From: Mytilus californianus
Taxonomy: Eukaryota
Length of the DNA: 64,000 nt
Reading direction: 5' to 3'
NCBI RefSeq assembly: GCF_021869535.1
Contig: NW_026262734.1
Coordinates: 47,306,001 to 47,370,000 of the forward strand
The notes under the pieces: model-generated
Databases searched by the model: none
The model's input: the letters and a program-made list of their open reading frames with translations, nothing else
Told to the model about the DNA's origin: nothing
Made by a program: the position numbers and the translations under genes
Part shown: one piece after another, positions 23,129-47,505 of the stretch
Position numbering within the stretch: position 1 is the first letter of the stretch
Layout of the letters: every line of letters starts with the position of its first letter

Positions 23129-24070
23129 TTATAATATTACGCCTTTTGGTAAGATGCCACTGCCATCACGGTACACCCTGTTTCTTGATCGGGTAGTGTC
23201 ACAATATCGATTTGAGGCAGCTTTCCAGACGCTATGGCCCATTTGGGTACGAAGTGCATCATACAGTTTAAAAAGACCAAGAATATCAACACTTGCATAT
23301 TTCAACATGTTTTCGTCCAATGGCCTTTTCTCCCAAATGTTACTCGACATATTCATACTTGACCGTCCTTGTAACTTGACATTCAATAATGTGTCGTCAT
23401 TTACGTATAACTCTAGGCAGTGTTTAAGGCTTCTGATCTTAGTATATCCATTTCTGTATATTCGATTGTTTACTTCTAGTATTTGAACGTCTAGTACTCC
23501 ATCGAGTTTAACTTTGTGAAGGTGTAATAAAGCATCGGCATCTTCTCGGCAGTCGAACATCAGTTTTTCTAATCCACTATCCTCGAGTATAGAACGGAGA
23601 CCATCATCAAATACACTGTTCCCTATTTTCAAAATATCGATTAGATAGACCAAATCTTGAGTGCCAATGTTAATCATTGTTACTGATCCAAATCTTGACA
23701 AGTCTACCCCTTCGCAATCAACGGCTATCATTTGTTTATTTTTTATCTTTTCCTGGAGCTCTTTAATGACTTCAATGAACTTATCCTTCGTGTCAACATA
23801 TTTGTAAGTGCTGGTTTCGTTATTACCAATTTTGATGGTATTGGCAGTCATAATATGGTCATCCTTTCTGTCATCTTTTTCTTCTTTCTCATTAATGGGT
23901 TTTTCTATCTGGTCTGCTACTTTCTTGGAAGATTGATTGCTTTTGTCGAAGTTTTCTTTTGTCAATGACCCTTTTGAACTCACTAAAGTGATTTTTGCTT
24001 TTTTGGTCTTGGTTTCACTGGTGGTTTGTTCTTCTGTGTTATCTGTGTCTAATGTGCGTTTAGTTGCCAT
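23129..24070 (-). CDS. Stand-alone DEDDy 3'-5' exonuclease, EXD1/Egalitarian-like (paralog 1), 313 aa
   Basis: ExoI AVDCEG (D118,E120), ExoII KLMFDCREDADAL (D177), ExoIII YASVD (Y258,D262), WEKRPL motif. Basic, low-complexity N-terminus with NLS-like clusters (KR..KTKKAK). Splice acceptor tttttcag| 20 nt upstream of the ATG. Confidence 0.9.
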   Translation of the reverse strand: MATKRTLDTDNTEEQTTSETKTKKAKITLVSSKGSLTKENFDKSNQSSKKVADQIEKPINEKEEKDDRKDDHIMTANTIKIGNNETSTYKYVDTKDKFIEVIKELQEKIKNKQMIAVDCEGVDLSRFGSVTMINIGTQDLVYLIDILKIGNSVFDDGLRSILEDSGLEKLMFDCREDADALLHLHKVKLDGVLDVQILEVNNRIYRNGYTKIRSLKHCLELYVNDDTLLNVKLQGRSSMNMSSNIWEKRPLDENMLKYASVDILGLFKLYDALRTQMGHSVWKAASNRYCDTTRSRNRVYRDGSGILPKGVIL

Positions 24071-24349
24071 TGTATGTTATATTTGTTATCCTGAAAAATA
24101 AAGGACAGTCATTTCTTAAAAACACCTTGTTATCATTTCAATGCTGAATAATTTTTAATATTCATGTCATTTCATGGTATATAGAAAAAAAACATATTAT
24201 ATGAAAATCACCAAAAATATATAAAAAAGAAATGACAAATCTTGTTCGGCAAGTAAACTTCGCACCTATATCAGAGTTTAACATATATTTATATTGAGAA
24301 AAAATCCTCGTTCCAACAAATATTTAAACAGTAATGGTAAATGAGATAG

Positions 24350-25690
24350 AGGAATTTGATTTTAACGAAAGAAACCTCTTTATTACTGAAAAATTATTAC
24401 ACCAGGGTTTTTGATATCACAAACCAAATGGGCATTTGAAAAGTCAGAATGCGAGTATATATGGTTTATGTCATTTTTAGTAACAACAGACAAAAGAACT
24501 ATGTCAATTGGACCTGCTTTGATACGATTACTGCCCTTGAATTTTTACTAGATAACAGTTTTGTTCGCTATGGAGATTCCGTATATCGTCAAGTTATCGG
24601 AATTCCAATGGGGACTAACTGTGCACCACTTATTGCTGATCTGTTTCTGTATTGTTATGAGTTACAATTTATGACTAAAATCAGGAAAGACCCATCGAAA
24701 CAACATCTGATAAAAACATTTAATAACACTTTTAGATATTTGGATAATATTTGCTCTCAATAATGACGATTTCAGTATGTACACTAAAGAGATTTATCCT
24801 GCTGAACTGACTTTAAATAAATCTTATACTAACAATGAACACTGCCCTTTCCTGGATATCTATATCTTTAACGGGAAGCTTAATACTAAATTTTTTTTAT
24901 AAAAGAGATGATTTTTCATTTCCTATTGTTAATTGTCCATTTTTAGATGGTGACGTTACCTTGTCACCATCTCATGGTGTTTATATATCTCAACTTGTTC
25001 GATTCGCTCGTGTATGTAACAACGTATTTGATTTTAACGAAAGAAACCTCTGTATTACTGAAAAATTATTACACCAGGGTTTTCGATATCACAAACTAGT
25101 CAAAACATTTACTAAATTTTATCATCGGTACAAGGACATCATTCGTACATGTAAATATAAATCAACATGCAGACATCTTATACGTTCAGGTATTTCACAT
25201 TCAATCTTTTATGATAATATTCTATACAAAGCACAAAAATGTTGACATTCACCTCAAAAGCTAACCAAATCTTTAAACAGACTTATTCAGAAGGGATATA
25301 GTTACGATACTGTTGTCAGGTCATTAAAGATGGCATATTTTGGTATAAGTATTGATTCACTCATAAGATTCTACATTGACTAGAGGTATAGGGGGAAGGT
25401 TGAGATCTCACTAAACATGTTTAATCCCGCCGCATTTTTGCGCATGTTCCAAGTCAGGAGCCTCTGGCCTTTGTTAGTCTTGTATGTTTTTTTGATTTTA
25501 GTTCATTTATATGTTTTGGAGTTTAGTGTGACGTCCTTTTTCAATGAACTAGTACACATTTTTGTTTAGGGGCCAGCTGAAGCATGCCTCCGGGTGCGGG
25601 ATTTTCTAGCTGTGTTGAAGACCCATAGGTGTCCTTCGGCTGTTTTCTGCTCTATGGTTGGGTTGTTGTCTCTTTGACACATTCCCCATT
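24350..25690 (+). mobile_element. 5'-truncated Penelope-like retroelement, second family (RT, thumb, 3' terminal region)
   Basis: ORF 24449-24763 has GIPMGTNCAPLIADLFLYCYE and FRYLDNI. ORF 24835-25245 has GVYISQLVRFAR..KLLHQGF..KFYHRY. Contains stops and frameshifts. The 3' tail (25380-25690) resembles repeat family A. Confidence 0.85.
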
Positions 25691-28174
25691 TCCATTCTCC
25701 ATTTAATCAATAGGTAGAAATGGGTGTAGTATTTGTAAAAAATTGTTAAAAAAGTAATTAAATACTTGATCCATATAGTATTTGATGCAGATCTCAGGAT
25801 AAATATCAGGATGATTAAAAAGAAGATGTTTACACAATAAACAACTCTTCTTTTGGTCAAAATGATACTATTAAACGCAAGTGAAAACATTTGCACAACC
25901 AAATCCATGTCTACGCTTCAATTTCTACTTGATAAGTTTTAACAAGCATGATTTCAGCCTTTTCCATTTCCCTACACATGAGTCAGATTTCGAGTTGTAT
26001 CAAGATATTAAAAAAGAATTAATATAAAAGCTTCTTTTGACACAAATGTATATGTACAAATGAACACGATTCACTAAAACAAATATAATAAAAATTTTGG
26101 CACAAGTTGTTTTTTTTTTATAAAATGGTAAACATATCTGCGATGTTTAGTTGTATATTCGAAATGAATAGAATTGGAGCTTTGTACAATTACAAAACAA
26201 AACCTATTATACATTTACAAAACAAAGCCTATTATACATAAAAATCAGTTTTAAAAAAGAAGAAAGGGACAAGAAACCTTGAGTGTGAATTCAACTATTT
26301 CAACCATACGATTTTCCTGTTCCAGTTTCATTTATTTGCAATAGTGACACGCAAGGTGATGATGCTTAGTTCTGTGATAAATACGTTCCAGATGGCAATA
26401 TGCATCGGAGAGATTAAAGTCTGGTTGATAGATAATATCACTAGCTTTATTGTTGTTACATAATCTAGTACTGCATATGCGTTTGTTTAAAGGTCGATAC
26501 ACACGATAAAATTTCATAAAAATATCTAGTATTGTACGTTTTTGTAATACAAGATCCTGTTGTACACATGAACAGATAAATTCTATCAGATCAATTTGTA
26601 TAATGTTTTCCCGCAACAACGGTATCAGTCAATGTGACTATTTTTTTACTATGTATTTCAACTAAATTCTATGAAAAGTCAAGTTCTGATTCTAATAAAT
26701 ATGTTGGACTAGACTTTTAATCAAACGGAGAAATATATTCGGTGCACAAGTTGCATCAATTATTGGATGATTTGAGAATGGAAAATCAAATTACCAAAAG
26801 CCTTTTTATATTAAATCTCGCCATCTTTTTTGCGCATCTATTTTTGTTCACATTTTAGAAATATGTATTAGTATTGTACACGTTCTTCCAAACGACACTA
26901 GAATGGAACATTTCAAGTGAATAAAAATAAAAAGTCTCCAAAAAAATCTAACAAGGAGAGAAAATTTATCCATCCTCAATACAATCTTTTAGGATTTGCA
27001 ATAGCTTATAAAACATTGTATTTAGAATGTACACACGGCAAGAATTCATATTTTTAGTAAAATTATTATAATACAAATCGTATCGTGTGTACTGGCATTA
27101 ACGTATCTAATACAAACTCTTGTTCAAACCACCCAGTACAGAAGTTTCAAGGCCATCATTATTCTATAATTATAACCTAACTTTAACGATCACGATGAAA
27201 ATTGTTCTTCAGAACTACAACTGCGTACAATAAACAAATATATGACTTACTGTATGTTATATTTCTCTTTCTCTTATGACTCTAAATTTGAATATGACAT
27301 AATAGATTATACGATTTTCAGAAAATTAACACTTCTTCCTGAAATTTAAGACACATGAGATAAGCATAACCCTACTAACTGGTATGCATATCATCTTATG
27401 TTATCTTTCCGATAAAATATTTAAAAACAACAATGAATCGATTATATGGGAAATACAAGTTTAACACGTGATCGAATATCCCTTATCGCTTTAATCATAA
27501 ACTTCTATATTTAGTGATCTAAAAATCAATGTTTGTGACTTAATGCAGTATTGAGGTGGTTTTCTATTACTGGAGATGAATAATTTTATTGACAAAAAAT
27601 ATAGACAGTGAAAGGGAGTAATTGAAAAAAAAAGCGAAATATACTAAAGGGACAATCAAAATTCAGCAATCTTAGAACAACCGAAAACACCATGACAATT
27701 ACGACGGTAGGACAACAAGCCGTCTATAAAACACGTTAAACATGTGTTGCCCTGGAAGGGAAAGCTTATTTCCTTTGAACAACTGCCACTCATTGTGTGT
27801 TTTCCTACAATGTAATGTCATATCTGATATTTTTGTTGTTGGATAATTTGGTGATGACAGCAGATCTTTGATAGTTCCTATCTACTTTATTCAATTTTTT
27901 TAAATATGGAAGATTAAGCGCCGGGCATATTGTATAATAGACACTTGAATTGTATAAAAGACTATGTGCCCCATTCCCCTTTATCATCTTGTGTCGTTTG
28001 TTTCGTTGTGTGTATGCTTCATTGACGTATACCGCATGTCTCTTTTATTTAAATGTTGTCGATTAAAGTCATTTGTCCTTTATTTTCATGCGCTTTCAAA
28101 AAGACTGTTACTCTCAAAATTATTTTGTGAGTTCATCATGAAAATATAAACCTTTTGGTTTATTGTTTAATATA

Positions 28175-28770
28175 CTGTGAAAGTACTTTCATTCGTGGGT
28201 ATCAATTTTCGTGGTTTGAAGAAAAGTTTGTAGATTCCTAAATTCGTAGATTTAAGATTTTTGAGGGGAAAAAATAGTAGTATAAGTGAAAATTGTATAG
28301 GACAGCCATCGTAAACGAAGTATTTAGCATACGGAAATTGTGTTTCATAATGACTGCGTGATAATTTATTACCTTAACATTGTACATGTTGTAGCACAAT
28401 AAAGTATTTATTTTGATTTATATGTTTGTTAATTATTCTGTAACAGTCATCACCGGAAATACGAATGTTATCAAACTTAACACACTCTTCATTAGAAATA
28501 GAAAAAAAAGTAAAACAATTGCTTATTGAGGGTTTACAGCTTTCAAGGATATATTCTCTCTGCATTAATATAGAAAAATACAAGCGCTTTCATTCAAATA
28601 ATTTTATTGGTTATTTGCTCGTTTCCAAGTTTGGTCCTTCAAAGGTTACATTTCCATGTTTTCACTTTGCTCAAGTCATTGTATTTCGTTGGACACTAAA
28701 ATTCGTGGATAGAGAAAACCAAAAACAAAACACCAAAATTGGTACCCCACGAAAAAAAGTACTTTCACAG
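28175..28770. mobile_element. Tc1/mariner-type MITE with TA target-site duplication
   Basis: TA|ctgtgaaagtactttcattcgtggg ... cccacgaaaaaaagtactttcacag|TA. Confidence 0.75.
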
Positions 28771-31563
28771 TATAACTTTTTGGTATGTATTTACCCATAT
28801 TTTGCTGTTTTAAATCGTGTTTGCCCCTTAAGATTTTAGGTTTAATGTCAACCTAGTATACACTTGACCAAAGTTGTTTATGATCATACTACATATTTCA
28901 ATTTCATGCAATGGTTATAATTACACACGTTTAGAGTGCCTACTGTATAAAGTGAACTTACAAATACAATCTTTGTAAAATGTTTCACTTGCTACCAAAA
29001 AGTATTAGAGGTGTATATATTTATTTTTGATACCTCATATTTGAATGAAAAATTTACTAAAAAGTATAACAAAAATACCGAACTCATAGTTATATTCAAA
29101 AGGGGAAGTCCATAAAAACCGACAAAATTAAGTTTTAACAATCAACGAATCGAGTGAAAAACAACTGTCAAATTATACTCATATAAACAGAAAAATCAAA
29201 ATGACATGTAAAGTCGTTTCAAACAGATTTAAGTCACATATTAAACATATTCGTTATCATGAGTGACAGGTTATCCAAATCAATAAATCCTGTCAGAATA
29301 ACACCTAATCGAAGACATTCGTAACAAAATCAACCTAAGTTGATCTTAGATAGCCATGCAGTTTAATTATTTCAACGGTGTATTTGACTCTAATCTCAAT
29401 TAATTAGGATTGTCAAATTTCTACCAGAGGCCGGAGATTCTTTCCAGAGACTATGGCTTCAATCAACAAAATAAGTGGCAGTCATACTCAAACAACAATC
29501 AAATGACACGAAGAAAACAACTATAGACAATCGTGGGAGATCAACAATAGCCGCATATCCATACGATATGTGATCTACTGTTGAGGAGTCTATCGAAGTT
29601 GTGAATAATATAACAAAGATCAACTCAATACCAAATTCACATCAAACATTATGGACAATCACTTATGATGTTTCTTACTTGGAAAAGAAAATGCTCATGT
29701 ATTGGGGATGAACTAGCTTCCCAATCTCAAATTACTCCCTTTTAATCTCAGTAATTTGAATAACAAAATATTATTGGAAGAACGTACAATAGAATTGGTA
29801 ATAAGACGATGTGGTATGAGACAACAATCGAACTAAGTCAAATAACGTAGATTTAAGCAATTAAAGGTCATAGTACGGCCTTCAACTATGAGAAGAACCA
29901 ATACCGTCAGCCATTACAGGCTCCGACATGACAACAGTTGTAACAATTCAATCAAAAAAAACCTACCGTTCTGATAAATATAATAAATGAGAAACAGATC
30001 GATAAAACAGACAGCAAACAACAGTAACCACTGAACCACAGGCATAGGATTTTGACGTGGGACACATGTTGTTTTGTCGGAAATTTTAGTTTAGATTGTC
30101 CATGTGAAACTGAAATATCTAAATATAGAAAAGGACGATAATTGATCATGTTGATATTAATGTATGATTTATTTGAAGTAAGTTTCCTTTGATTACTAAC
30201 CGCAGTATAAATTGATTATTTCAAGCTGAAACAAAATTCACCAAGGTAACGGCTAGTGTTATCAAATCGGTCATTTTAACGAAATTTAGACAAATGTTCA
30301 CTACGTTTGGTCATGAGCTGTAAGTCGTAACAGTACAGGAACACATTTTGCTATTACAGGAGCGTTTATTTGTGCCCGGTTTAATGTAGAAACAAAAACA
30401 AATGTACAGGCAAAACCGAAATGAATAATGCATTATCAAAGCATGCTCCATGTTACCAAGAGTAACTTCAGCGGCTTCACCTGCTGATATGATATCATGT
30501 TGTCATCAACACAAGTATCAGCGCATGTACTTCAAAATAGGAAATACAACAACGACATAAACATCGTAAAGGGGAAAAAGATCGTGTTTAAGGCACTAGC
30601 TTTTCTGATCTTACTTCAGCTGTGATCCATTTAATGTTAGTTTGAGTTGCAAAAAGAAACTTTTTCCGTATGTTATATTTCACCTTCAATCAAAAACAGT
30701 CGTTTGAAATTTAATACATTATGTAATTGATACCATGTAACAGAATTATTGATTATTTTGTAAAGGTAATGACAAGATAAAAGTGTGACAATGATCTGGT
30801 TATTCGTGTATTGTTCACCTTGGATCTCAGGCAATTATTATGTCATGTTGATCTCTTTTTCAGATGACTGCACGCTAATTTGAATGTAACAATATTGTTT
30901 TTATACTGCAATAAAAAACGACTACAATTATACTTATGAAGATGTTAACACAAAAATAAAACGTATGTTCCATCCCTAACGAGCACCAATCTGTGAAGAA
31001 AGTTGACGTGACATGACATCGACATTGCACGAAATATTACTTTGTGACTATTCAAGTACATGTAGGTAAAGACAACAGGAAGTGTTGCAGTATAAATAAT
31101 AAATCAATGATAAGAAATACTTTAGTACAAGAATATATGTAGGAAAGAAAATCATGAAACATCATATTCCTCGAGGTGACAAATACACATTATGTGACGT
31201 CATGATAAAATGAATACTGCAACTCTTTTGAGTTATGTTGCTATCGAATCTGTTATTTGTGCTCGCTAAAGCCAAAATGTGTAAGTAAACGAAGAAAATT
31301 ATAAATATTCTGGTACACATGTAAATGAAGATTCATAAATATAACTGTATTATTAGAGTCTCTGGTTGTGGTTTTAATTTCTCTGATCTATAAACTTTTG
31401 CGACATTTGCCATAATTCTTTAAGTTTTAAGGATTAATTTTCTCTGTTCTTTAAGTCTTGTCAAGATCCTTTTTTAAAGATACTCGCTCTGAGTCTACTT
31501 GTAGCTCCTGTCCACAAAAACATCATGAGCGTGTAGAGTGATTAAACCATGCTAAAGGAAATT

Positions 31564-31609
31564 ACGCCAGACGCACGTTTTGTCTACAAAACACTCATCA
31601 GTGACGCTC
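31564..31609 (-). ncRNA. Minimal type I hammerhead ribozyme (PLE-associated), probably inactivated
   Basis: Minus strand: gagcgtca CTGATGA gtg-ttttgta-gac AAAA c-gtgc-GTC tggcgt. Stem I pairs gcgtca with tggcgt. Core GAAA reads AAAA (G12>A at 31581), and stem II has a mismatch. Confidence 0.8.
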
Positions 31610-32525
31610 GAATAAAACAGATAAAAGGTCAAAAGAAAAGAATGCCATATACATCATACACATCAGTATACGATCATATAAGCTTCAACAAGGTTAGGCA
31701 ATATTTTGTTTAAATAATACTAAAAATGGTCGTGTATTCGTTGACATATAACTTAATCGTGTTAATACTAAGCACTGTCTGAACTCAATTTATTTTAGTA
31801 ATATATTACTTTTATACAGTAACTGTACAGTGATTAAATGAAAAATCTCAAACAATCATATCGCACGTTTAACAACTTTTTGAAAATCAACGTATATTAC
31901 ATTTTCGGAAAGCTACTTTCACTTTTGATATATTGAAGTTTTACTTTTAAATATACCCGATTTTTAACAATGTTTCAATGTTTCTAAAAATAGGAATTAA
32001 TTCATGTCAGAGATAATAGCTAATATGAAAGCTGTTGGTTGTTGATGTGGTCTACTGTACTGTCCGTTGTAGTGTCCATTATTTTAGATGCTATTTATAA
32101 ATTATTAATCTTTTTAAATACAAGTTTTTAACAAATCATTGCGTGAGAAAAAAAACTTGATGTTAGATCGGGTGAATCAATATTCAATCTCAAAATAAAG
32201 TTCACATGATATTTTATCCTACGTAACCTTTACCAGTTGTCACTATCTTTATCATAGTACAGTATTTGAATGATATGCAATTTACATTATTGGTTTTTAT
32301 TTTTCTGTAAAAATTGTTGGGTTGTTTTTAGCGTGAGAATTATACTGCTGCTCCCATTCATTGGACCAAAACTTTACTATACTAATACCAGTATATGATA
32401 TTAGTTAATTACTGCACTTATAATATATATGTGCTATTTCCGTTACCTTGCATTTAAAGGAATAATTTACACTATTCTTCCTGTAATTATGTAGTAATAT
32501 TTGATAGTATGTATAACTGAAATGT

Positions 32526-36294: not shown

Positions 36295-36790
36295 TTATAG
36301 TGCCTAATAAGATTTTGAGAGTTAGACGAAATTGACATTTAAACGATCGTATTGAATTTTGGTGTCCAAGAAAAGGCAAATCGGACATATTTTGACTTTA
36401 TTTACTGACTACTTTTGTTTGGGATTAATTGTTATTATAACATGAGACTGAAAAATGTTTTTATTTGTTAAGATAAACAATAATTTTATCTGGCGTAGCC
36501 GTGCGTAAAATGTATTGCGGCATTTCTCTTCGAAAAATGACTTGTGTAATGGAATAAAACGTCTGATTTGTAAACTTTCTCTTTTTTTCTCTCCGGAATA
36601 TGCTATTTAAAAATAATTTATCTACTCTATATATGGAATATTTTGTGAAAATATAAGAAGTGGCAATACTTTCCTTTCATAACTTTAGTTTTATTGATAA
36701 AAAATAATATGGACTCGTCCAGTGTCCTGTTTGAAAGTTGTTTAAGTTACTGTTCACAGTCATGCATGTTCTGATTTTATCAAAACACGT
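36295..36790. repeat. ~500-bp sequence with an inverted copy at 57665-58176
   Basis: ggcaaatcggacatattttgactttatttactgactac..ggcgtagccgtgcgtaaaatgtatt..tctccggaatatgctatt; reverse complement found at 57665-58176. Confidence 0.8.
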
Positions 36791-38848
36791 GTATGAAAAA
36801 AATTAACAGTTTGAAGGTAAACTAATGAGAACTTGATCCAATCAAATTGCGTAAGATTCAAAAACAATGACTGGTCCACATTATAATAGTGATTTACGGA
36901 AAGTCTCGGTACCGACTGTTTACACCAATTTTGACAGATAGAATGAATGGGATCGTCTTAAAATTAAAAAAAGTACGAAGTAATTAGCATTTCAAGTTTT
37001 ATATAAGTTGCCAATAACTTTTAAACAAAATTTTACACAATGACTTATTAAATTCAATAAAGATTGTTGTCTGTTCACAAGTCCTGCAGAGGTCTCCGCA
37101 ATATGTCTGAGCTTTTGTCTTGCGTGCATCCATAAAGGTTTTCTATTGAAATTAACATGAGGAGATGTGGTATGATTGTCAATGAGACAACTATCAACCA
37201 GAGTTAAAATGAAATGGTATTAAGCAATTATAGGCCACCGTATGGCCTTCAATAATGAGAAACTCATTGCTGTATAGTCGGATATAAAAATCCCCGATAG
37301 GAAAAATTTGAAACAGTTCAAACGAAAAAACTAACGGCCTAATTTATAAAAAAAAAAAGAATCAATGAATCAACGACAACCATTGTACTACAAGCTCTTG
37401 ACTTTGAACAGTAACATCAATAATGTGGCGGGGTTGAGCATGTTTGTGAGCGCCCAACCCTCTTCTAACCTGGGAAATATTTGAATACATGCATTATTTC
37501 TGCTTTAATTGGGGCAACACGAACGTCGAAAATCAACGAGAGAACATGGTATGATGAATACGATTGAAGCCGAATTATATACAAAATATCCTGATTTTTT
37601 TGGAGATAATTTGTAGGGACTCCTAGTATCTTGTCATTTTCTCAATTTATACAAGAAAATAGTGGAATTCTAGATTCGTAAAGCTTTTTGATGAACAGAT
37701 TGAGATTGAGGAATGCATTTAATATCAAAAATGATATGTAACGTAAATTTTCTGGCTTAAAAAGTATTTGAACCCAATTTTTTGTCAGCACGGATTATAT
37801 GTTCCCGCTTCTGCCCCTCCCCCTAGTATACCCTTTCCACTATATTTCTAACGGAAACTGGACGTTTTAATATGTGTACACTATGGCTGTGTAGGTGTAG
37901 AAAATAAAAATAAAAAACATCATTCAACAGTACTTATCTGGCTTGATACACATGTGTATGAGCTTGACGACATATCCGATTTAAATGTTCTGTTTCGGAA
38001 TATCTGGACTCAAATTTTGCTGCTCATTGTCGATTGAGTATTAATATGCTTCGTTCATGGGACTGATTTTATTTATACAAAAATACCTTATGATTCAAGT
38101 GCGCCGTAAAAATTACATTTGAGACGACCCCTTTCATTTTATCTGTCAAAGTCGGTGTCAACAGTCGGTACAAAGACTTTCCCTAAATCTCTAATAGTAG
38201 ATAAGTATATACATATAGTATATAAAAGTAATATGGGTAAACTTGGTAGGGAGAAAATGACAGATAATTTAAGTTCATTTTTTGCAAAAACGAATAAGAA
38301 TTTGTCAACCAGTACTACACAATTCAATTGCCTCTATTTATGTATATATCTATATTTATACTGCACTCGTTCTATTTGAACAGTCAAAACGCGTTGACCG
38401 TATATTTCTATGTCATATACAGTCACTGACCTGATATCACTTTTCCTCATGAATATTTAAATAGAAATTGCCGAAATTATAATTAATTATTCATACGACC
38501 TAATCAACCTGTTCTTGTTTCCAATGTATACAACGACTCAAACTTATTTCTTTTGCAATTTTTAGAAAAAAAACATATTTCACTTGTTAATTTTTTTGGT
38601 TTGCAAACTATAAATTATTATGTTTTATGCTTATTGTTGATAATTTTAGTTCATTCTCAAACAAGTTCGTTCACCATCGATTGCGGGTTTCAACAGGTAA
38701 TGTACATTTCATTGTGTTGTATATTTCTCCGCCTGCATGATATGAGGCCTTTTTATAAAAGGGGGAAGTTTCCCAATATTTAAATCAAATAATAACATTA
38801 ACACATTAAACAACAATTGAAAATGTTTTTTTTTAGATTGCAGTATAA

Positions 38849-38997
38849 AGACAATAATAGTGCATTGACTTGACATATCAACGATATAAGGATTCGGCCC
38901 GAAACGGAGAAAAAGCTCGGCAGAGCCTCGCATTTCCCCGTTTCTAAGCCTCATCCTTATATCGTTGATATGTCAAGTCAATGCACTATTATTGTCT
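38849..38997. mobile_element. Palindromic MITE (~150 bp, 45-bp perfect arms)
   Basis: agacaataatagtgcattgacttgacatatcaacgatataaggat (38849-38893) is the exact reverse complement of 38953-38997. There is also an inner gaaacgg/ccgtttc pair. No clear TSD. Confidence 0.8.
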
Positions 38998-39955
38998 ATG
39001 TATATCTAATTAATTAAAAAACTTTTCTGTTTGAATAATGCTTTTATGTAAAGGGGAAACTGTTACTCGTGTGTGCGATTCTTTTTGTCTCTTTTACTAA
39101 GGATAGTTAATCAATAACTAAATTGCAGTACTCGTCGATATTTCATTCCTGTATCTCACGAATTTTGGTCTTTTACTTACAAAACTTATTTTCTTGTAAC
39201 GTATTTTATTGTTGAAGAATGAGTGTTGCCCGTTTTTTGTTTTTTGTTTTTTGTTGTTTTTTTTTTTGTTGTTTTTTTTGTCGTTTGTTTGTGTCTCATT
39301 GACATACAACCGGATCCCCTTTTCTTTATATTTAAAAACAAACGAGATGACATCAATACCAATTCATGACACAAAATAACTGAGTTAAACTAACAGCAGA
39401 AGAAAGAAAAGGAAAAGCGCTTTCATGGTTGTACTCAATCTCGAAGTCACAATGTGGTCTTTGAAAAAAATTTTGTAAATAAAAAAAAAGAAATACAAAT
39501 GTTTTGAATGTTTATATAGGAAAAAGTAATGTTGTGTAAATTATAACAATTATTTCAATTTCAATCCTTATTAAGCTGTTGCTTTATTCCGCTTCGAGCA
39601 AATTTTGACCACATTTTAAAAATTAAATTGCTGCACGATCTAAAAAAGGACGAGGTTGACATATAAACTGCCGTCAATTATTGTGTGTGTGTAAGCAAGG
39701 ATTCGTATAGTGAGATCTCACTATACAAATCCTTGGTGTAAGTTTTAAAAGAAATGAATTGATTCTAAAAAAAATTGGAAAGGAATAAAAATACTTTTTT
39801 TCAGAAAAAAGAGGAAAAAAAACTAATAGATTTACATTCAAAGTTAGGGACGAAAAAAAGTACGACACTAAGATTACAAAAGTAATGTTCATGTATGTGC
39901 ATGAAAAAAAAACCAATCCCCCTTCAAAAAAAAAAAAAAAACACACATACACTTA

Positions 39956-42939
39956 AACAAGAGGCTCTCAAGAGCCTGAATCGCTCACCTGTATTTCAGA
40001 GGAGAAGATTTTTAAATGTTAGCAAACTTGATGAACAAATTGTGTAAAATTGTCTTTAAAGATCAATAACTCCTTAAGGGGTCAATTGACAATTTTGGTC
40101 ATATTAACTTTTTTGTAGATCTTACTTTGCTGAACATTATTGCTGCTTGCAGTTTATATATATCTATAATAATATTCAAAATAATAACAAAAAATTGCAA
40201 AATTTTGTTAAAACTACCAATTCGGTGGCAGCAACCCAACAATGGGTTGTTCGATTCGTCTGATAATTTCAGGGCTGATAGATCTGGACCAATTAAACAA
40301 TTTTACCCCATGTCACATTTGCTCTAAAAGATTTAGTTTTTGAGATATAAGCCAAAAACTGTATTTGACCCTTATGTTCTATTTTTAGCCATGGCGGCCA
40401 GGTTTGTCGATGGATACAAACTTCGGATACAATTTATAAACAAGATACCCTAAGGAACATTAAGTTAAAGTTTGAAGGTAATTGGCCCAGAAGTTTCAGA
40501 GGAGAAGATTTTTAAATGTTAGCAAACTTGATGAACAAATTGTGTAAAATTGTCTTTAAAGGGCAATAACTCCTTAAGGGGTCAATAGACAATTATGGTC
40601 ATTTTAACTTTTTTGTAGATCTTACTTTGCTGAACATTATTGCTGCTTACAGTTTATATTTATCTATAATAATATTCAAAATAATAACAAACTAGAGGCT
40701 CTAAAGAGCCTGTGTCGCTCACCTTGGTCTATGTGCATATTAAACAAAGGACACAGATGGATTCATGACAAAATTGTGTTTTGGTGATGGTGATGTGTTT
40801 GTAGATCTTACTTTACTGAACATTCTTGCTGCTTACAATTATCTCCATCTATAATGAACTTGGCCCAGTAGTTACAGTGGAAAATATTTTGTAAAAATTT
40901 ACAAAAATTTACAAAATTTATGAAAATTGTAAAAAATTTACTATAAAGGGCAATAACTTCTTAAGGGGTCAATTGACAATTTTGGTCATGTTGACTTATT
41001 TGTAGATCTTACTTTGCTATATATTATTGCTGTTTACAGTTTATCTCTATCTATAATAATATTCAAGATAATAACCAAAAGCTGCAAAATTTTCTTAAAA
41101 TTACCAATTCAGGGGCAGCAACCCAACAAAGTCTTGCCTGATTGGTCTGAAAATTTCAGGGCAGATAGATCGTGACCTAATGAACAATTTTATCCTCGTC
41201 AGATTTGCTCTAAATGTTTTGGTTTCAGAGATATGAGCCAAAAACTGCATTTTACCCTATGTACTATTTTTTAGCCATGTCGGCCATCTTGGTTCACGGG
41301 CGGGGTCATCGGACACATTTTTTAAACTAGATACCCTAATGATGATTGTGGACAAGTTTGGTTAAATTTGTTTTAGTAGTTTCAGAGGAGAAGATTTTTG
41401 TAAAAGATTACAAAAATTTACGAAAAATGGTTAAAAATTGACTATAAAGGGCAATAACTCCTTTAGGGGTCAACTGACCATTTTGGTCAAGTTGACTTAT
41501 TTGTAGATCTTACTTTGCTGAACATTATTGTTGTTTACAGTTTATCTCTATCTATAATAATATTCAAGATAATAACCAAAAACGGCAAAATTTCCTTAAA
41601 ATTACCAATTCAGGGGCAGCAACCCAACAACGGGTTGTCTGATTCATCTGAAAATTTCAGGGCAGATAGATCTTGACCTGGTAAACAATTTTATTCATGC
41701 CAGATTTGCTCTAAATGATATGGTTTCAGAGATATAAGCCAAAATCTACATTTTACCCCTATGTTCTATTTTTAGCCATGGCGGCCACCTTGGTTGGTTG
41801 GCCGGGTCACCGGACACATTTTTAAAACTAAATACCCCAATAATGATTGTGGCCAAGTTTGGTCAAATTTTACCAAGTAGTTTCAGAGGAGAAGATTTTT
41901 GTAAAAGTTAACGACGACGGACGACGACGGACGCCAAGTGATGAGAAAAGCTCACTTGGCCCTTTGGGCCAGGTGAGCTAAAAACTGCAAAATTTTGTTA
42001 AAACTACCAATTCGGTGGCAGCAACCCAACAATGGGTTATTCGATTCGTCTGAAAATTTCAGGGCCAACAGATCTTGACAAATTAAACAATTTTACCTCG
42101 TCACATTTGCTCTAAAAGATTTAGTTTTTGAGATATAAGCCAAAAACTGCATTTGACCCTTATGTTCTATTTTTAGCCATGGCGGCCATGTTTGTCGATG
42201 GATACAAACTTTGGATACAATTTATAAACAAAAAACCCTAAGGAACATTTAGTTAAAGTTTGAAGGTAATTAGCCCAGTAGTTTCAGAGGAGAAGATTTT
42301 TAAATGTTAGCAAACTTGATGAACAAATTATATAAAGTTGTCTTTAAAGGGCAATAACTCCTTAAGGGGTCAATTGACAATTTTGGTCATATTAACTTTT
42401 TTGTAGATCTTACTTTGGTGAACATTATTGCTAATTACAGTTTATATATATATATCTATAATAATATTCAAAATAATAACAAAAAACTACAAAATCTTGT
42501 TAAAACTACCAATTCGGTGGCAGCAACCCAACAATGGGTTGTTCGATTCGTCTGAAAATTTAAGAGCTGATAGATCTTGACCAACTAAACAATTTAACCC
42601 CATATCAGATTTGCTCTAAAAGCTTTAGTTTTTGAGATATAAGTCAAAAACTGCATTTGACCCCTATGTTCTATTTTTAGCCATAGCGGCCATGTTTGTC
42701 GATGGATCAAAACTTCGGATACAATTTATAATCTAGATACCCTAAGAAACATTAAGTTAAAGTTTGAAGGTATTTGGCCCAGTATTTTTAGAGGAAAAGA
42801 TTCTTGAAATATTTAACGACGACAGACGACGACAGACGACAACAGACGACGACGGACGACGACAGACAACGGACGACGACGGACGCCAAGTGATGACATA
42901 AGCTCACATGGGGCCCTTCGGGCTCCGGTGAGCTAAAAA
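39956..42939 (+). mobile_element. Non-autonomous Helentron/HINE-type element with a central ~500-bp tandem array (outer element)
   Basis: 5' aacaagaggctctcaagagcctgaatcgctcacctg; (GAC/GACG)n microsatellite at ~42817-42885; 3' hairpin gctcacatggggcccttcgggctccggtgagc followed by taaaaa. Units marked by ttcagaggagaagatttt at 39995, 40495, 42283 and ~42787. Confidence 0.8.
40690..41984 (+). mobile_element. Related HINE nested inside the outer element
   Basis: 5' aactagaggctctaaagagcctgtgtcgctcacc; acgacgacggacgacgacggacgccaagtg; 3' gctcacttggccctttgggccaggtgagctaaaaa. It interrupts the A-run of the host unit (ataataacaa|..|aaaaactgcaaaattttg). Confidence 0.85.
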
Positions 42940-43462
42940 GGAAGAATAGTCGGTGCATAATCTTCTGCTACCAAGGGTTTTTCACAAGTATAGTAGTGAG
43001 AAGAAAAGTTCCACTTTCCAAAATACACCAAACTATACATTTTACCTACTAGTATTTCGTGAAGTAAAATGCAAATTTCATAAGGCTTGGTCCAAATAGA
43101 TTTTGACTGTCCAATATCTTGCAAGTACGAAAAAGACCGTTCGAAAGTATATTTTGTCTATGTTTTGTATTTGCACAACTATTGAAAGTTGACCATGCAT
43201 TCGTTCTAAAATAAAATTTCACACAAGATAAAAGTTAACAGATACTAAGTGAAAAAAAATATAGACAACCGCAATGGGTTAATCGCTGTGACGTCCAAAA
43301 AAGAAAATAGCCAACACATATTGTAACTTTTAAAGCTAGTTAAATCAATTTATATGTTTAACGAACGTGCAATATCATACAAATTGTTTATCAAAACATA
43401 ACAAAAACGGAACGTTTAAGTATTCAATATTAATCAAAGCACAAAGGTTATTCCTGTACTTC

Positions 43463-43756
43463 TTTTATGCCCCACCTACGATAGTAGAAGGGGCATTATG
43501 TTTTCTGGTCTCTGCGTCCGTTCGTTCGTCCGTCCGTTCGTCCGTCCGTCCGTCCGTCTGTCCCGCTTCAGGTTAAAGTTTTTGGTCAAGGTAGTTTTTG
43601 ATGAAGTTGAAGTCTAATCAACTTGAAACTTAGTACACATGTTCCCTATGAATTATAATGACAAATTAGAGTGTTGACCCCAATTTCACGGTCCACTGAA
43701 CATAGAAAATGATAGTGTGAGTGGGGCATCCGCGTACTATGGACACATTCTTGTTT
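43463..43756 (-). mobile_element. Short HINE/Helentron-type MITE (~290 bp)
   Basis: ttttatgccccacctacgatagtagaaggggcat hairpin end; (GTCC/GTTC)n microsatellite; subterminal gtggggcat; ends cttgttt. Confidence 0.75.
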
Positions 43757-45359
43757 TCGAATGTTTTTTTAGCCATTTAGAACCTTTGGTAACCTCATAG
43801 TTTAAATGTCCATAATTAATACGACGTGATAAATGGGCGTTACAGACGACCGTTCACCTAATTTAACCCAGTCAATGGGAGACTTGAGCGCGCAAAAAAA
43901 TGGTCTCGTCCACACTGTTATGAAAACGATACTATGTTAAGATCCCTTTTGGTCATGAAGTTCTGCGTGTTTTTAATATATCCTTGCTTTCATATTTGTG
44001 TTCTTAGTGTTTTTGAGGGACCAAATTAATGCCTTCTAAAACGGCAACTGTATACCATGTCCTCTTCTCAAAATGAATTTGCAGTAATTGAATAACATTT
44101 AGGGACCCCGATTGGTCAATTTGTATCGCAAAAAAATAAATGTTGGAAAACCTAAAAAAATACCTTTAGAAGCAATAAATCACTAATTAAATTCCTCATC
44201 AGAAAATCTTTTATATATTTACGGTTTTGGTGATAAGTCCTGTTCTGGCATAAAAAAAAAACAACAGATCTATAGGAAAAACTGTTTTATAATCATTCTT
44301 GCAGTCGGGGTGGAGGTAATAATGCCAATCCATTGTGAGAAGTGGAGCATGTCAAGACTTAATTCAGACAGCAAAGGTGTGGGGAAACTTGTAGATAAAT
44401 GGATGTAGATTTACGTCATATTGAGTTTTATTTGTCATTTCATAAAAAAGCAAGTTGAATACCTTTTGCTATATAAAGAATTCAAGGTAAAACAAAAATC
44501 AGAGATAAGTGTCTGTATTCACACTTCCCACATTTGTAAATCAAAGTTGACCGTAGAAAATTTTCCTATTGTCAAGTTGATTTATTTCCATACTCCACAA
44601 ATATCTTTGCCTCATTGACTTATACATGATGTAGTTTTCAGCGTTCCTATTAAAGGTTATTCCAGAAAAACCATTCGAAAGCACCTAATTTACAAATTCG
44701 AATAAACTAACAGCAAACTGCGTTTTAAAAATTGAACACTCTTTCATGGTGAAATAGAGAACATATAAAACATCGTTTTCTGCAGTTGTTTCAAATCCAA
44801 TACAATATTTAGCCTATGATGAAGAGATGACCAGGCTTCATAAAATCATTTTGCATTCTATTCATCTGAAAGATGTTATAATTGAAAACTATCACTTCGA
44901 TTTAACAAGCAATGAATTATTGTATTTATTTTAAAATGATTAATAGGAAAATTACAGCAATAAATAGAAATGAATGATGCCCCCTCTCCTCTCCTCTGCC
45001 AAACGAATGAGTATAGTTCCACATACAAACAGTGATGTTGAAGTACAAATTGAAATTGTTGCGCTGTCTGTAAGACACAAATTGTACATCGCCTGACCAT
45101 AGGAAATTATAAATTTAATGTGTAATGATCTATCTTTTATTTTAATTTTGAATTTCTACACTTGCAGGACTTAATGTCCAGCCAAAAGGTGTTAACTTTC
45201 CAGAGTACTGTCAGCTAAAAGTTTTCACCCGGTATTGATTAAATATTTGACAATACTAAAAATGTCTTATTTATATCATTTGGGACATTAAAATCTTACA
45301 GAAGTAGTACAAACCATGTTTTCCTTTATATTGCAAGTGAGAAGGAGATGAAGTCCACC

Positions 45360-45656
45360 TACCGGTTTTTGTGAATATCTAACATCCCCTTTTCTGACTT
45401 TAATACAAAATAATTCGACTGGCATTTTAAGAAAATTGAAAAAAATCCAAATCCTGTGGACATGCACACTTCAATTATGTGTACAAACAACCTTCACAAT
45501 ATTAAAGCTGTAACTCAAAAACTGTAGTAGGGGATAGCCGGACTATCATGTATCTATATCCGGAAGTACGAACGAACGAACGAACGGATGTACGGTCGGA
45601 CGGACAGACAGGGGTAAATTGATATACCCATCGACACTTTGTCGCGGGGGCATAAA
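45360..45656 (+). mobile_element. 3' part of a HINE-type element
   Basis: (GAAC)n/(GGAC)n microsatellite, then ataccc-atcgacactttgtcgcgggggcataaa terminal hairpin. Left boundary uncertain. Confidence 0.6.
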
Positions 45657-45697
45657 GCATGACAGGTAAAATAAACTGTCCTTGGTTTTATTAAATA

Positions 45698-46780
45698 TTA
45701 CAGGATTATATCACGCACGCGTGTCGGCAAAAGAGCATCTCCATCACGATGCGTTCTTGCTCGAGATCTTTTGTTGTCACAATACAGGCTTGATGCAGCT
45801 TTCCAGGTGTTGTGTGGCATTATGTTTCTAAATTTATCATATACGTGAAAAAGTCCTAGAACATCTACAGCTGCATATTTCAGCATACTTTCACTCAGGG
45901 GTCTTTTTTCCCATATTTTGGTTGTCCATAGCATAATTTGTCGTCCTTGTTTTTTCAACCTAAGGAGAGTACTGTTAGACGGAAAACTTTCCAGGCATGT
46001 CTCAAGACTTGCCAATAACGTGTTATGTCTTTTTCTTTTCATCCTGTTCCTCGCTTCTAACAATTGAACATCTAGTACTCCGTCCAACTTTACTTTATAC
46101 AGATGAAATAAAGCATCCGCGTCTTCTCGACAGTCAAACATCAATTTTTCAATACTATTATTTTCAAGTATACAGCGAAGACCGTCATCAAATACGCTAT
46201 TCCCTATCCTCAAAACATCAATTAAATAGACCATATCTCTAGTACCTATATTAACCATCGTTACGCATCCAAATCTGGATAAGTCTACCCCTTCACAGTC
46301 CAATGATATGGTTTTGCCGTCTTTAATCATGTTGTTAAGCTCATTGATTGCAGAGATGTATTTTTCTTTCGTGTCAATATACTTGTAAGAACTTGTTTCG
46401 TTTATTCCTACTTGTATTGTCCTGCTTTGGGTTATTTCTCCTGCTGATTCTCTCCTATATAAAACATCTTCTGCGTTGGAATCGCTAGTGTTATTTTCGT
46501 TGCTGGTTGAACCGTCGGATTGCTGTTGTTGATTTTCGTTGTCTGGTTCGGAATTACGTAGGTGTATTGGCCCGCTTTGGGTTATTTCCCCTGCTGATTC
46601 TCTCCTATATATACATATAAGATTTTCTGTGTTGGAATCGTTAGTATCATTTGCATTGCTTTCATTTACAGAGGTATCGCTACTAGCTGAATGATGTTTT
46701 AGCTTCTTATTGCTGGTTGGACCATCGGATTGCTGCTGTTGGTCTTCATCATCTGGTTCTGATTTACGCTTGGTTGCCAT
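45698..46780 (-). CDS. Stand-alone DEDDy 3'-5' exonuclease, EXD1/Egalitarian-like (paralog 2), 360 aa
   Basis: ExoI SLDCEG (D161,E163), ExoII KLMFDCREDADAL (D220), ExoIII YAAVD (Y302,D306). By hand count, 86 of 116 core residues are identical to paralog 1. NLS-like KRK..KKLK; internally duplicated N-terminus; AATAAA just after the stop (45687-45692). Confidence 0.9.
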   Translation of the reverse strand: MATKRKSEPDDEDQQQQSDGPTSNKKLKHHSASSDTSVNESNANDTNDSNTENLICIYRRESAGEITQSGPIHLRNSEPDNENQQQQSDGSTSNENNTSDSNAEDVLYRRESAGEITQSRTIQVGINETSSYKYIDTKEKYISAINELNNMIKDGKTISLDCEGVDLSRFGCVTMVNIGTRDMVYLIDVLRIGNSVFDDGLRCILENNSIEKLMFDCREDADALFHLYKVKLDGVLDVQLLEARNRMKRKRHNTLLASLETCLESFPSNSTLLRLKKQGRQIMLWTTKIWEKRPLSESMLKYAAVDVLGLFHVYDKFRNIMPHNTWKAASSLYCDNKRSRARTHRDGDALLPTRVRDIIL

Positions 46781-47505
46781 TGTTATCTATGTTATAAATA
46801 AAAACAGTAATTAAAACAATAAGCAACTTTTAAAATAAAACCAGTCAATTTTGAATAAGAAAAAAAAACGTATAGCTAGTAAATTATGTCTCGTCGATGA
46901 AATATAACTTTTTAAAGCATTCAATAGTTTTTCTAACCTGCAGTGATATATAGCAAGATGCTTTATAGAACGCGTAAAACATTTCCACATGGAATTGGAA
47001 AAAGTGTGGAAACAGACTTTATAGCTGATTATGCGGTTTGGGTTTTTCTCATTGTTGAAGGCCATACGATGACCTATATTTGTTAACTTCTATTTATATT
47101 GTCACAACAACCTTAGATCATCTTTTCATGAAGCGAAGGGTGATTTATTATTGTTTAACGTCCAATGGGAAATAGTTCGTGCATATTCAAGTTGAGAACA
47201 CATTAACAATAAATGTAATAGATACTAGTAAGTTGTGCAGGATAGGTTGACCGGCAAAAAGGCGAGAACACCGGCTATCACTAGAAATGGGATAGAATCA
47301 GGCCATCTACGAAGTTGCGGCATTTTTGTTAAATATTGTGTACCCTTTTGTGGTTTGAATGCTAAATATATGGAAATTTTATAGAAAATCCACAACCTTT
47401 CTCCGTGTACTCTTATATTTGACAACTATGTACTAAATAGAAGGTGAACTAAAAAATGCAGTGTTAGCAATTATCTCCCTAAAACAAGTTTTGAATTGAA
47501 GATAT

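What the first reader, a model, noticed from the sequence alone, without database searches (positions are those of the whole stretch)
23129..46780. Co-oriented exonuclease - deaminase - exonuclease trio: candidate nucleic-acid editing/degradation defence locus
Seen: the only three real ORFs in 64 kb are all on the minus strand, all have an uninterrupted CDS, and all appear to act on nucleic acids (two DEDDy 3'-5' exonucleases flanking a HxE/PC..C protein). Established: in vertebrates APOBEC3 deaminases and 3'-5' exonucleases (TREX1, ISG20) restrict viruses and retroelements; EXD1 and Mut-7-type nucleases act in piRNA/small-RNA pathways; mussel genomes carry many short dispensable genes in hemizygous blocks. 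Inference: this may be a linked, lineage-specific antiviral or anti-transposon module. I know of no description of such a cluster. Linkage could also be coincidental co-residence in a fast-evolving, repeat-rich region.
Basis: partly seen in the sequence, partly recalled or inferred. Interest (0 to 1): 0.88.

Follow-up and report, generated by a model that had tools for sequence, protein, structure and literature searches.

The report
Mussel deaminase gene flanked by exonucleases
Three real, co-oriented mussel genes (an unannotated AID/APOBEC-like deaminase between two active-site-complete 3'-5' exonucleases) have stayed neighbours across the genus Mytilus, but nothing yet shows that they work together as a defence module.

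Summary

All three catalytic cores are under purifying selection (dN/dS 0.15-0.39). The deaminase is transcribed as an unspliced unit of about 2 kb. In one transcript contig, exonuclease A starts at a 5' exon upstream of the deaminase, so the deaminase lies inside its 11.1 kb intron.

The order exoB then deaminase is kept in M. coruscus, M. edulis and M. galloprovincialis. M. trossulus shows exoB, deaminase and exoA in that order.

Coupling is unproven:
- Only 1 of about 16 paralogous deaminase loci has an exonuclease beside it, and that copy is a pseudogene.
- Exonuclease paralogues on other chromosomes have no such deaminase within 10 kb.
- More distant homologues are unlinked.
- A complex prediction gave no answer.

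Both components are new members of known kinds; tandem AID/APOBEC-like expansions in bivalves were described in 2018.

The parts
23129..24070 (-). exoA coding sequence (313 aa). It is a DEDDy 3'-5' exonuclease of the EXD1/Egalitarian branch with a low-complexity, basic N-terminus.
   Evidence: PF01612 E 5.8e-21. PDB: Egalitarian 4.8e-16, EXD1 2.8e-13. D118, E120, D177, Y258 and D262 are conserved in a 46-sequence family alignment. They align to Egl D561/E563/D621/Y704/D708 (bioRxiv 10.1101/2025.08.03.668247). Domain dN/dS is 0.15.
22944..24090 (-). exoA main exon: the last 20 nt of the 5' UTR, the whole CDS and the 3' UTR. The lower bound is approximate.
   Evidence: A transcript contig of a related species (L037) is collinear with window 24091-22944 from its base 131 on; its first 130 nt are not. 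The acceptor TTTTTCAG|G lies at 24091/24090 on the minus strand.
24091..35183 (-). 11.1 kb GT-AG intron of one exoA transcript isoform. It contains the whole deaminase gene on the same strand.
   Evidence: A contig of run X2 joins window 24060-24089 directly to 35183 (table 7). The donor GTAAGA lies at 35183 on the minus strand. One contig in one run.
35184..35400 (-). Distal non-coding first exon of exoA. The upper bound is uncertain.
   Evidence: X2 depth is 3.8 in bin 35200-35399, with the splice junction at 35183/35184. The block is present in M. coruscus (93% identity) and M. galloprovincialis (73%) between exoB and the deaminase.
32526..33389 (-). Deaminase coding sequence (287 aa). It is an AID/APOBEC-like zinc deaminase with a PCx6C motif and a disordered, basic C-terminal tail (residues 222-287).
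31863..33890 (-). Deaminase transcription unit, unspliced, about 2 kb.
   Evidence: Contigs of three runs from two studies cover only this span and nothing in 34000-34600 or 35400-36000. Reads of a recorded RNA-seq run lie at 32200-33800, all with the first mate on +.
45698..46780 (-). exoB coding sequence (360 aa). It is a paralogue of exoA (61% aa identity in the domain) with a repeated acidic/Q-rich N-terminus.
   Evidence: PF01612 E 2e-21. Identity. dS to exoA is saturated at 3.5. Orthologues exist in M. coruscus, M. edulis, M. galloprovincialis and M. trossulus. Domain dN/dS is 0.26-0.39.
27284..27349 (-). Possible proximal alternative first exon of exoA (weak).
   Evidence: Bases 1-63 of transcript contig L037 match here at 78%. 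The block is collinear with M. trossulus L022:5970-6313. It may be a repeat.
36298..43930 (.). 7.6 kb present here but absent from M. coruscus between exoB and the deaminase. It includes a satellite array of roughly 0.5 kb units at 39994-42842.
   Evidence: Self-comparison and collinearity break.

Best explanation
The trio is three separate, functional host genes that have stayed neighbours since before the Mytilus species split.

Middle gene. It is a divergent, mollusc-specific member of the AID/APOBEC-like zinc deaminases. By inference from the family, it converts C to U in single-stranded DNA or RNA, most plausibly of viruses or retroelements. Its basic, disordered tail may serve nucleic-acid binding or nuclear import. 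It is the outermost member of a tandem, pseudogene-rich expansion on the same chromosome.

Flanking genes. They are old paralogues of an expansion-prone exonuclease family related to EXD1 and Egalitarian. Unlike EXD1 they keep the full DEDDy centre, so by inference they trim or degrade RNA or ssDNA from the 3' end.

Architecture. In at least one isoform exoA is transcribed from a promoter upstream of the deaminase, which then sits in its first intron with its own transcript end. The two could therefore share chromatin context or regulation.

Shown: gene identity, fold, motifs, selection, transcription of the deaminase and exoA, and synteny within the genus.

Inferred: substrates, an immune or anti-transposon role, and any cooperation. 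I put true functional coupling of deaminase and exonuclease at about 0.2-0.25.
For: Identity:
- Exonucleases.
- Deaminase. Sub-threshold Pfam hits fall in SNAD4, APOBEC_N, NAD1, APOBEC2/4 and XOO_2897-deam.

Family and array:
- 73 cluster representatives match, with Mytilus coruscus the only named source; the Atlas puts the two nearest clusters mostly in molluscs.
- About 17 loci lie on C154 46.60-47.34 Mb, 7 of them intact. Further copies lie at 60.85 Mb and on C2.

Function:
- Core dN/dS is 0.15-0.39.
- Transcription is shown.
- Splicing of exoA is shown.

Synteny (exoB orthologue to deaminase orthologue, same strand):
- M. coruscus: 5.5 kb apart; deaminase 94% identical.
- M. edulis: 7.3 kb apart; 79% identical.
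- M. galloprovincialis: 6 kb apart; 84% identical.
- M. trossulus: exoB copies, then the deaminase 3' end, then exoA copies, all collinear with the window.

Background: tandem, copy-variable AID/APOBEC-like arrays with pseudogenes are a published feature of invertebrates, including the oyster (PMC5889660).
Against: - No curated AID/APOBEC Pfam model reaches threshold.
- A family profile finds no APOBEC in PDB by sequence.
- PF18774 has no hit in this genome.
- The nested-gene isoform rests on one contig in one run.
- A related species' transcript uses a different first exon.
- The M. galloprovincialis exoA orthologue has no deaminase within 10 kb upstream and lies on another contig.
- No activity data exist for either protein.
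Confidence: 0.68

Rival explanations
1. True two-enzyme module, 'mark and degrade'. The deaminase converts C to U in foreign or retroelement ssDNA/RNA. The neighbouring DEDDy exonucleases then resect or destroy the edited strand, or generate the single-stranded substrate. Linkage and the nested architecture would be kept by selection for co-regulation.
For: - Gene order and orientation are conserved in five Mytilus species.
- The deaminase lies inside an exoA intron in one isoform.
- Runs X2 and X5 hold both the deaminase and exoA transcripts.
- A second adjacency exists: an exoA-derived copy lies 3.8 kb upstream of deaminase paralogue L012, on the same strand.
- Both families are intronless in their CDS, prone to expansion and have fast-evolving termini.
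Against: - The second adjacency is a pseudogene.
- That pseudogene is 80% identical in DNA to exoA, while L012 is only 24% identical in protein to the window deaminase. The pair was therefore not duplicated as a unit.
- Landing within about 5 kb of one of about 17 loci in 740 kb has a chance of about 0.2 (my estimate).
- The other roughly 15 deaminase loci have no exonuclease match reported nearby.
- Exonuclease paralogues on C13 and C99 have no family deaminase within 10 kb.
- The M. coruscus paralogue L019, the distant homologue L020 and the four-copy exonuclease array L028 are all unlinked.
- Runs X22 and X24 hold exoA but next to none of the deaminase.
- The complex prediction scored 0.00, which is no answer.
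Confidence: 0.22
2. The middle protein is not a polynucleotide mutator. It is a housekeeping or small-molecule/tRNA deaminase-fold protein, or a catalytically silent binder, so the trio has no editing theme.
For: - No AID/APOBEC Pfam model passes threshold.
- Pairwise dN/dS is below 1 with no sign of an arms race.
Against: - All 50 best Foldseek hits are AID/APOBEC.
- Structure and language-model neighbours are APOBEC4/3/1/AID clusters.
- The sub-threshold Pfam hits are almost all AID/APOBEC-like or toxin deaminases.
- A tandem, pseudogene-rich, lineage-specific expansion is typical of conflict-driven AID/APOBEC-like genes, not of housekeeping deaminases (PMC5889660).
- The catalytic H, E, C and C residues are conserved.
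Confidence: 0.08
3. The genes are cargo or remnants of a mobile element or endogenous virus rather than host genes.
For: - DEDDy exonuclease ORFs are carried by some retroelements (PMC5408684).
- Other exonuclease-bearing transposons were noted elsewhere in this genome (unchecked notes).
- The exonuclease family has a patchy distribution: Mytilus, sea anemones and many marine metagenome contigs.
Against: - No transposase, RT or integrase ORF or Pfam hit lies in the window.
- Flanks are collinear single-copy DNA across species.
- Only the coding regions of exoA and exoB match each other.
- Purifying selection acts on orthologues at a fixed locus.
Confidence: 0.03

Closest known systems
Invertebrate 'classical' AID/APOBEC-like deaminases (Krishnan et al. 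2018, PMC5889660), including the 22-paralogue expansion in the oyster
   Same: HxE...PCxnC zinc centre. Cytidine-deaminase fold closest to APOBEC3/AID. Lineage-specific tandem array with pseudogenes. No signal peptide evident from the sequence (not tested with a predictor).
   Different: No curated Pfam AID/APOBEC model reaches threshold. There are about 57 residues between HxE and PC because of two helical inserts (my reading). The PCx6C spacing is invariant across the family. There is a long basic, disordered tail. The gene is nested in, and flanked by, exonuclease genes, which that survey does not mention.
APOBEC4 (vertebrates) and the cnidaria-algae-APOBEC4 clade
   Same: APOBEC4 clusters are the nearest named neighbours by language-model features (0.90) and by Atlas structure.
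   Different: APOBEC4 is a slowly evolving single-copy gene with a defining metal-binding insert in loops 1 and 3 (PMC5889660). This family is multi-copy and fast-diverging (paralogues 24-50% identical). That insert was not demonstrated here.
EXD1 (piRNA biogenesis factor; PDB 5fiq)
   Same: Best-matching exonuclease branch (E about 2e-13). NCBI names the Mytilus orthologues 'piRNA biogenesis protein EXD1-like'.
   Different: EXD1 has lost the DEDD residues and is an inactive RNA adaptor with an N-terminal Lsm domain (PMC4712191). The mussel proteins keep all five DEDDy residues, and only a low-complexity N-terminus precedes the domain.
Egalitarian exonuclease domain (Drosophila; PDB 9uju, 9rvy)
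   Same: Top PDB match (E 4.8e-16). The DEDDy pentad is retained at identical aligned positions.
   Different: Egalitarian is about 1000 aa, with BicD/Dlc-binding and helical RNA-binding extensions. The mussel proteins are 313-360 aa stand-alone domains.
APOBEC3 restriction followed by repair-nuclease or TREX1/ISG20-type degradation; AID working with the RNA exosome (recalled from the literature, not tested)
   Same: The concept of deamination combined with 3'-5' exonuclease action on the same nucleic acid.
   Different: In vertebrates these partners are unlinked genes. Here the enzymes are neighbours, but cooperation is unproven.

Membership tests
AID/APOBEC-like deaminases (cytidine deaminase superfamily) | Zinc-binding/catalytic motif H-x-E ... 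P-C-x(n)-C | tested here: met
   H100-G-E102 and P160-C161-x6-C168 are invariant in 9 sequences. In 54 family members the two cysteines are invariant and H, E, S156 and P160 are conserved at 90% or more.
AID/APOBEC-like deaminases (cytidine deaminase superfamily) | Deaminase alpha/beta fold with the closest structural neighbours among AID/APOBEC | tested here: met
AID/APOBEC-like deaminases (cytidine deaminase superfamily) | Match to a curated AID/APOBEC sequence model above its threshold | tested here: not met
   No Pfam hit for the window protein. Relatives give only sub-threshold hits: SNAD4 7e-4, APOBEC_N 0.006, NAD1 0.008, APOBEC2, APOBEC4, XOO_2897-deam 2e-5. A family profile finds no APOBEC in PDB by sequence. 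PF18774 is absent from the genome search.
AID/APOBEC-like deaminases (cytidine deaminase superfamily) | C-to-U deamination of polynucleotides | not testable with these tools
   Needs a biochemical or mutator assay.
APOBEC4 clade | Metal-chelating insert: two Cys and one His in loop 1, one Cys in loop 3 (PMC5889660); slow, single-copy evolution | tested here: inconclusive
   The insert residues were not mapped. The multi-copy, fast-diverging behaviour is unlike APOBEC4.
DEDDy 3'-5' exonucleases (PF01612, RNase D/Rrp6/WRN type) | Pfam model above threshold and all five catalytic residues D-E-D-Y-D | tested here: met
   75.5 and 77 bits against a 23.6 cut-off. D118, E120, D177, Y258 and D262 are conserved in the family and align to the Egl pentad (bioRxiv 10.1101/2025.08.03.668247).
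EXD1 | Degenerate (inactive) DEDD centre | tested here: not met
   Bombyx EXD1 has S-G-D where the mussel protein has D-C-E, and K-L-S where it has R-E-D. EXD1 is described as inactive in PMC4712191.
EXD1 | N-terminal Lsm domain that binds TDRD12 | tested here: inconclusive
   No Pfam domain precedes residue 102 (exoA) or 136 (exoB), and the N-termini are low-complexity. A non-canonical Lsm domain could escape Pfam.
Linked defence module (operon-like gene pair) | Partners stay neighbours at orthologous loci | tested here: met
   M. coruscus, M. edulis, M. galloprovincialis and M. trossulus. This covers one genus only, so descent suffices to explain it.
Linked defence module (operon-like gene pair) | Partners recur together at paralogous loci and in distant homologues | tested here: not met
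   Only 1 of about 16 other deaminase loci has an exonuclease beside it, and it is a pseudogene. C13 and C99 exonucleases, L019, L020 and L028 are unlinked.
Linked defence module (operon-like gene pair) | Co-expression, induction by infection, physical interaction | tested here: inconclusive
   Two runs hold both transcripts, and two hold exoA without the deaminase. No metadata on tissue or challenge were available. The complex prediction gave no answer.

The most novel reading that the evidence does not exclude
A eukaryotic, chromosomally linked 'deaminate-and-degrade' pair. An AID/APOBEC-like mutator sits inside the first intron of an active DEDDy exonuclease gene. The two are co-regulated from one promoter region and act together on viral or retroelement nucleic acids. 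This would be an animal counterpart of multi-enzyme bacterial defence loci.
Probability: 0.15. Interest if true: 0.85.

Novelty: new member of a known kind. Interest (0 to 1): 0.45.

Why it matters
Mussels resist many viruses, carry transmissible cancers, and have very large variable gene complements, but their nucleic-acid-editing immunity is almost unstudied. This locus offers:
- a transcribed, selectively constrained deaminase family that neither Pfam nor this assembly's gene set captures;
- exonucleases that public annotation names after an inactive piRNA adaptor, although they keep a complete active site;
- a concrete pairing, testable at the bench.

If the pairing proves functional, it would be a rare example in animals of physically linked cooperating defence enzymes. 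If not, the locus still corrects two annotations and documents another AID/APOBEC-like expansion in bivalves.

Tried and rejected
- Complex prediction of the deaminase core (1-222) with the exoA domain (85-313): score 0.00, verdict 'no answer'. It is no evidence either way.
- Profile search of the family alignment against PDB sequences: only a spurious 0.05 hit.
- PF18774 search of the own genome, meant to fetch canonical mussel AID/APOBEC genes for a profile-profile comparison: no hit. That comparison was therefore not done.
- Segmental duplication inside the window: rejected. exoA and exoB match each other only over 636 nt of coding sequence at 70%.
- Retrocopy origin of the exonuclease pseudogene beside L012: not supported. 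I saw no poly(A) tract, and the match runs a few bases into the intron acceptor.
- A spliced 5' exon for the deaminase: a loose end at 33888 in run X2 maps to another chromosome (C110), so it was treated as a chimeric contig.
- Exaiptasia exonuclease locus: not on record.
- Large tandem-repeat scan: returned nothing at score 200 or more because the unit exceeds the 500-base period limit. The satellite was seen by self-BLAST instead.
- Mobile-element reading: rejected.
Full report
**1. Observation**

- The window (G000:C154:47306001-47370000; no N) has only three ORFs of 200 aa or more, all on the minus strand:
  - exoA, 23129-24070 (313 aa)
  - the middle ORF, 32526-33389 (287 aa)
  - exoB, 45698-46780 (360 aa)
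- GC is about 0.32 throughout. By my arithmetic, frames this long are expected about 2e-5 times by chance.
- Ten other ORFs of 94-136 aa gave no Pfam hit.

**2. The exonucleases**

- Both pass the curated PF01612 threshold (E 6e-21 and 2e-21).
- The nearest solved relatives are:
  - Egalitarian (4.8e-16)
  - a CCHC-type protein, 7c42/7c45
  - Bombyx EXD1 (about 2e-13)
  - more distantly mut-7, Rrp6/EXOSC10 and EXD2
- In the printed alignments, exoA D-C-E, R-E-D and Y-A-S-V-D lie opposite Egl D561/E563, D621 and Y704/D708. A preprint names those as the DEDDy pentad (10.1101/2025.08.03.668247).
- EXD1 has S-G-D and K-L-S at the first two sites. It is documented as an inactive RNA adaptor with an Lsm domain (PMC4712191).
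- In a 46-sequence family alignment down to 26% identity, E120, D177, Y258 and D262 are invariant and D118 is conserved at 90% or more.
- Public annotation calls the Mytilus orthologues 'piRNA biogenesis protein EXD1-like' or 'EXD1'. The name reflects similarity only, because two EXD1 features are not reproduced.
- Outside Mytilus the closest named relatives are sea-anemone proteins (37-45% identity). An unidentified eukaryotic contig carries four tandem copies (L028).

**3. The middle ORF**

- It has no Pfam hit.
- A word-index search found one relative, P0001 at 79% identity. The window protein itself is not in that collection, unlike exoA and exoB, so it appears unannotated in this assembly.
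- An exhaustive HMMER search found 73 cluster representatives.
- Nine paralogues and orthologues of 24-80% identity share an invariant H100-G-E102 and F155-S156...P160-C161-x4-H166-x-C168. In 54 sequences both cysteines are invariant and H100, E102, S156 and P160 are conserved at 90% or more.
- AlphaFold2 gives a confident core (residues 7-220, pLDDT about 90) with a helix/strand order that I read as the deaminase topology. It has two helical inserts and a disordered basic tail at 222-287.
- All 50 best Foldseek PDB hits are APOBEC3, AID or APOBEC1 (best E 8e-4).
- Atlas searches put it in mollusc-only clusters with no common Pfam family. APOBEC4, APOBEC3A, APOBEC1 and AID clusters come next.
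- Individual relatives give sub-threshold hits to SNAD4, APOBEC_N, NAD1, APOBEC2/4 and XOO_2897-like deaminase.
- Verdict: a zinc deaminase of the AID/APOBEC-like assemblage, too divergent for current models.

**4. The family in this genome**

- Six-frame searches find about 17 loci on the same chromosome between 46.60 and 47.34 Mb. Seven have intact ORFs of 180-340 aa; the rest are fragments with stops.
- There is another copy at 60.85 Mb and more distant copies on C2.
- The window gene is the outermost member, 209 kb from the next.
- Tandem, pseudogene-containing, individually variable arrays are the published pattern for invertebrate AID/APOBEC-like genes, including 22 paralogues in the oyster (PMC5889660).

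**5. Are the genes alive?**

*Selection.* Pairwise Nei-Gojobori dN/dS values:

| Region | dN/dS |
|---|---|
| Deaminase core | 0.18-0.22 |
| exoA domain | 0.15 |
| exoB domain | 0.26-0.39 |
| Deaminase tail and exonuclease N-termini | 0.29-1.1 (relaxed) |

*Transcription of the deaminase.*
- Contigs of three small runs from two studies cover only 31863-33890 and not the flanks. This argues that those runs are RNA.
- A recorded RNA-seq run gives sparse reads at 32200-33800, all with the first mate on +. In the usual stranded libraries that points to a minus-strand transcript.

*Splicing of exoA.*
- One contig of run X2 joins window 24060-24089 (the exoA start region) to 35183.
- The boundaries are canonical: GTAAGA donor and TTTTTCAG acceptor on the minus strand.
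- This isoform therefore has an 11.1 kb first intron that contains the whole deaminase gene.
- A transcript contig from a related species (L037) is spliced at the same acceptor but carries a different 130-nt leader. Part of that leader matches window 27284-27349.
- First exons therefore vary, and the nested arrangement depends on the isoform.

**6. Linkage**

*Orthologous loci.* The exoB orthologue is followed on the same strand by the deaminase orthologue:

| Species | Locus | Distance | Deaminase identity |
|---|---|---|---|
| M. coruscus | L025 | 5.5 kb | 94% |
| M. edulis | L026 | 7.3 kb | 79% |
| M. galloprovincialis | L027 | 6 kb | 84% (annotated as a 314-aa gene) |

- In M. trossulus, two exoB copies (L024), the deaminase 3' end (L022:1-252) and several exoA copies (L022, L023) are collinear with the window. 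A unit running from the deaminase 3' half to exoA has been tandemly duplicated.
- The M. galloprovincialis exoA orthologue lies on another contig, with no deaminase within 10 kb upstream.

*Paralogous loci.*
- One exonuclease copy lies 3.8 kb upstream of paralogue L012 on the same strand.
- It is broken into at least three frames.
- It is an 80% DNA copy of the exoA main exon, whereas L012 is only 24% identical to the window deaminase.
- The pair was therefore not duplicated as a unit. I estimate chance placement at about 0.2.
- Exonuclease paralogues on C13 and C99 have no family deaminase within 10 kb.
- The M. coruscus paralogue L019, the distant homologue L020 and the exonuclease array L028 are also unlinked.

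*Co-occurrence in runs.* Runs X2 and X5 hold both transcripts. Runs X22 and X24 hold exoA but almost none of the deaminase.

*Complex prediction.* It gave no answer.

**7. Reading**

- The components are real and probably active enzymes acting on nucleic acids.
- Their neighbourhood is old within the genus and has an interesting nested architecture.
- The evidence so far is what common descent predicts. It does not show a functional module.
- I give about 0.2-0.25 to real cooperation ('mark and degrade').
- I give about 0.55 to an immune or anti-retroelement role of the deaminase, by analogy with its family.
- Neither component is new in kind. The pairing is undescribed in the literature I could search.

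**8. Limits**

exoB transcription and its 5' structure were therefore not examined.
- Run metadata are coded, so tissue or challenge could not be read.
- Non-Mytilus bivalve genomes could not be searched for synteny with these tools.
It agrees with the 94% identity of the deaminase to its M. coruscus orthologue, but I did not verify it.

Noticed in passing
window 39994-42842: Satellite-like array of roughly 0.5 kb units (77-93% identity between copies). It sits inside a 7.6 kb segment (36298-43930) that M. coruscus lacks at this position. Related repeats lie at other positions near the orthologous loci of M. edulis, M. trossulus and M. galloprovincialis.
   Followed up: partly
window 9354-11252: Two head-to-tail copies of a 950-bp unit at 97% identity.
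   Followed up: no
window 30883-33997 versus 44257-46969, compared with L025: Divergence from M. coruscus is uneven along the locus. It is about 8.6% in DNA and dS 0.065 around the deaminase, but 18-20% and dS 0.235 around exoB, 12 kb away. This could reflect deep haplotypes, gene conversion among exonuclease copies, or a non-orthologous exoB copy.
   Followed up: no
L026:10001-11083 (M. edulis): The exoB orthologue has an in-frame stop at codon 69 in this assembly. The public 340-aa product does not equal the straight translation, so the annotation presumably skips the stop with an intron.
   Followed up: partly
L022:12527-14210 and L023:438-1478 (M. trossulus): Partial copies of the deaminase 3' half plus its downstream DNA recur between tandem exoA copies. 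A unit of roughly 12 kb running from inside the deaminase to past exoA appears to have been amplified (my estimate from the repeat spacing).
   Followed up: partly
window 32526-33389: The deaminase protein is absent from the protein collection that holds exoA and exoB of this same contig. It seems unannotated in this assembly, while M. galloprovincialis has a 314-aa model for its orthologue.
   Followed up: partly
alignment A3 (exonuclease family): Many non-Mytilus family members end in a CxxC...CxxC zinc-finger-like tail that the Mytilus proteins lack. One of the closest solved relatives is named a CCHC-type domain protein (7c42).
   Followed up: no
window 33481-33533, 34950-35200, 37160-37199, 31400-31800: Short, very highly expressed or high-copy repeat segments give depth spikes on both strands in all four runs and break the transcript contigs.
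   Followed up: no
window 23100-23486 (+): A 128-aa ORF lies antisense to exoA. It is most likely a by-product of the coding strand's composition.
   Followed up: no
G000:C2:46152027-46171452 and C2:47108271-47108870: A second, more divergent group of the same deaminase family lies on another chromosome, including open frames of 467 and 428 aa.
   Followed up: no
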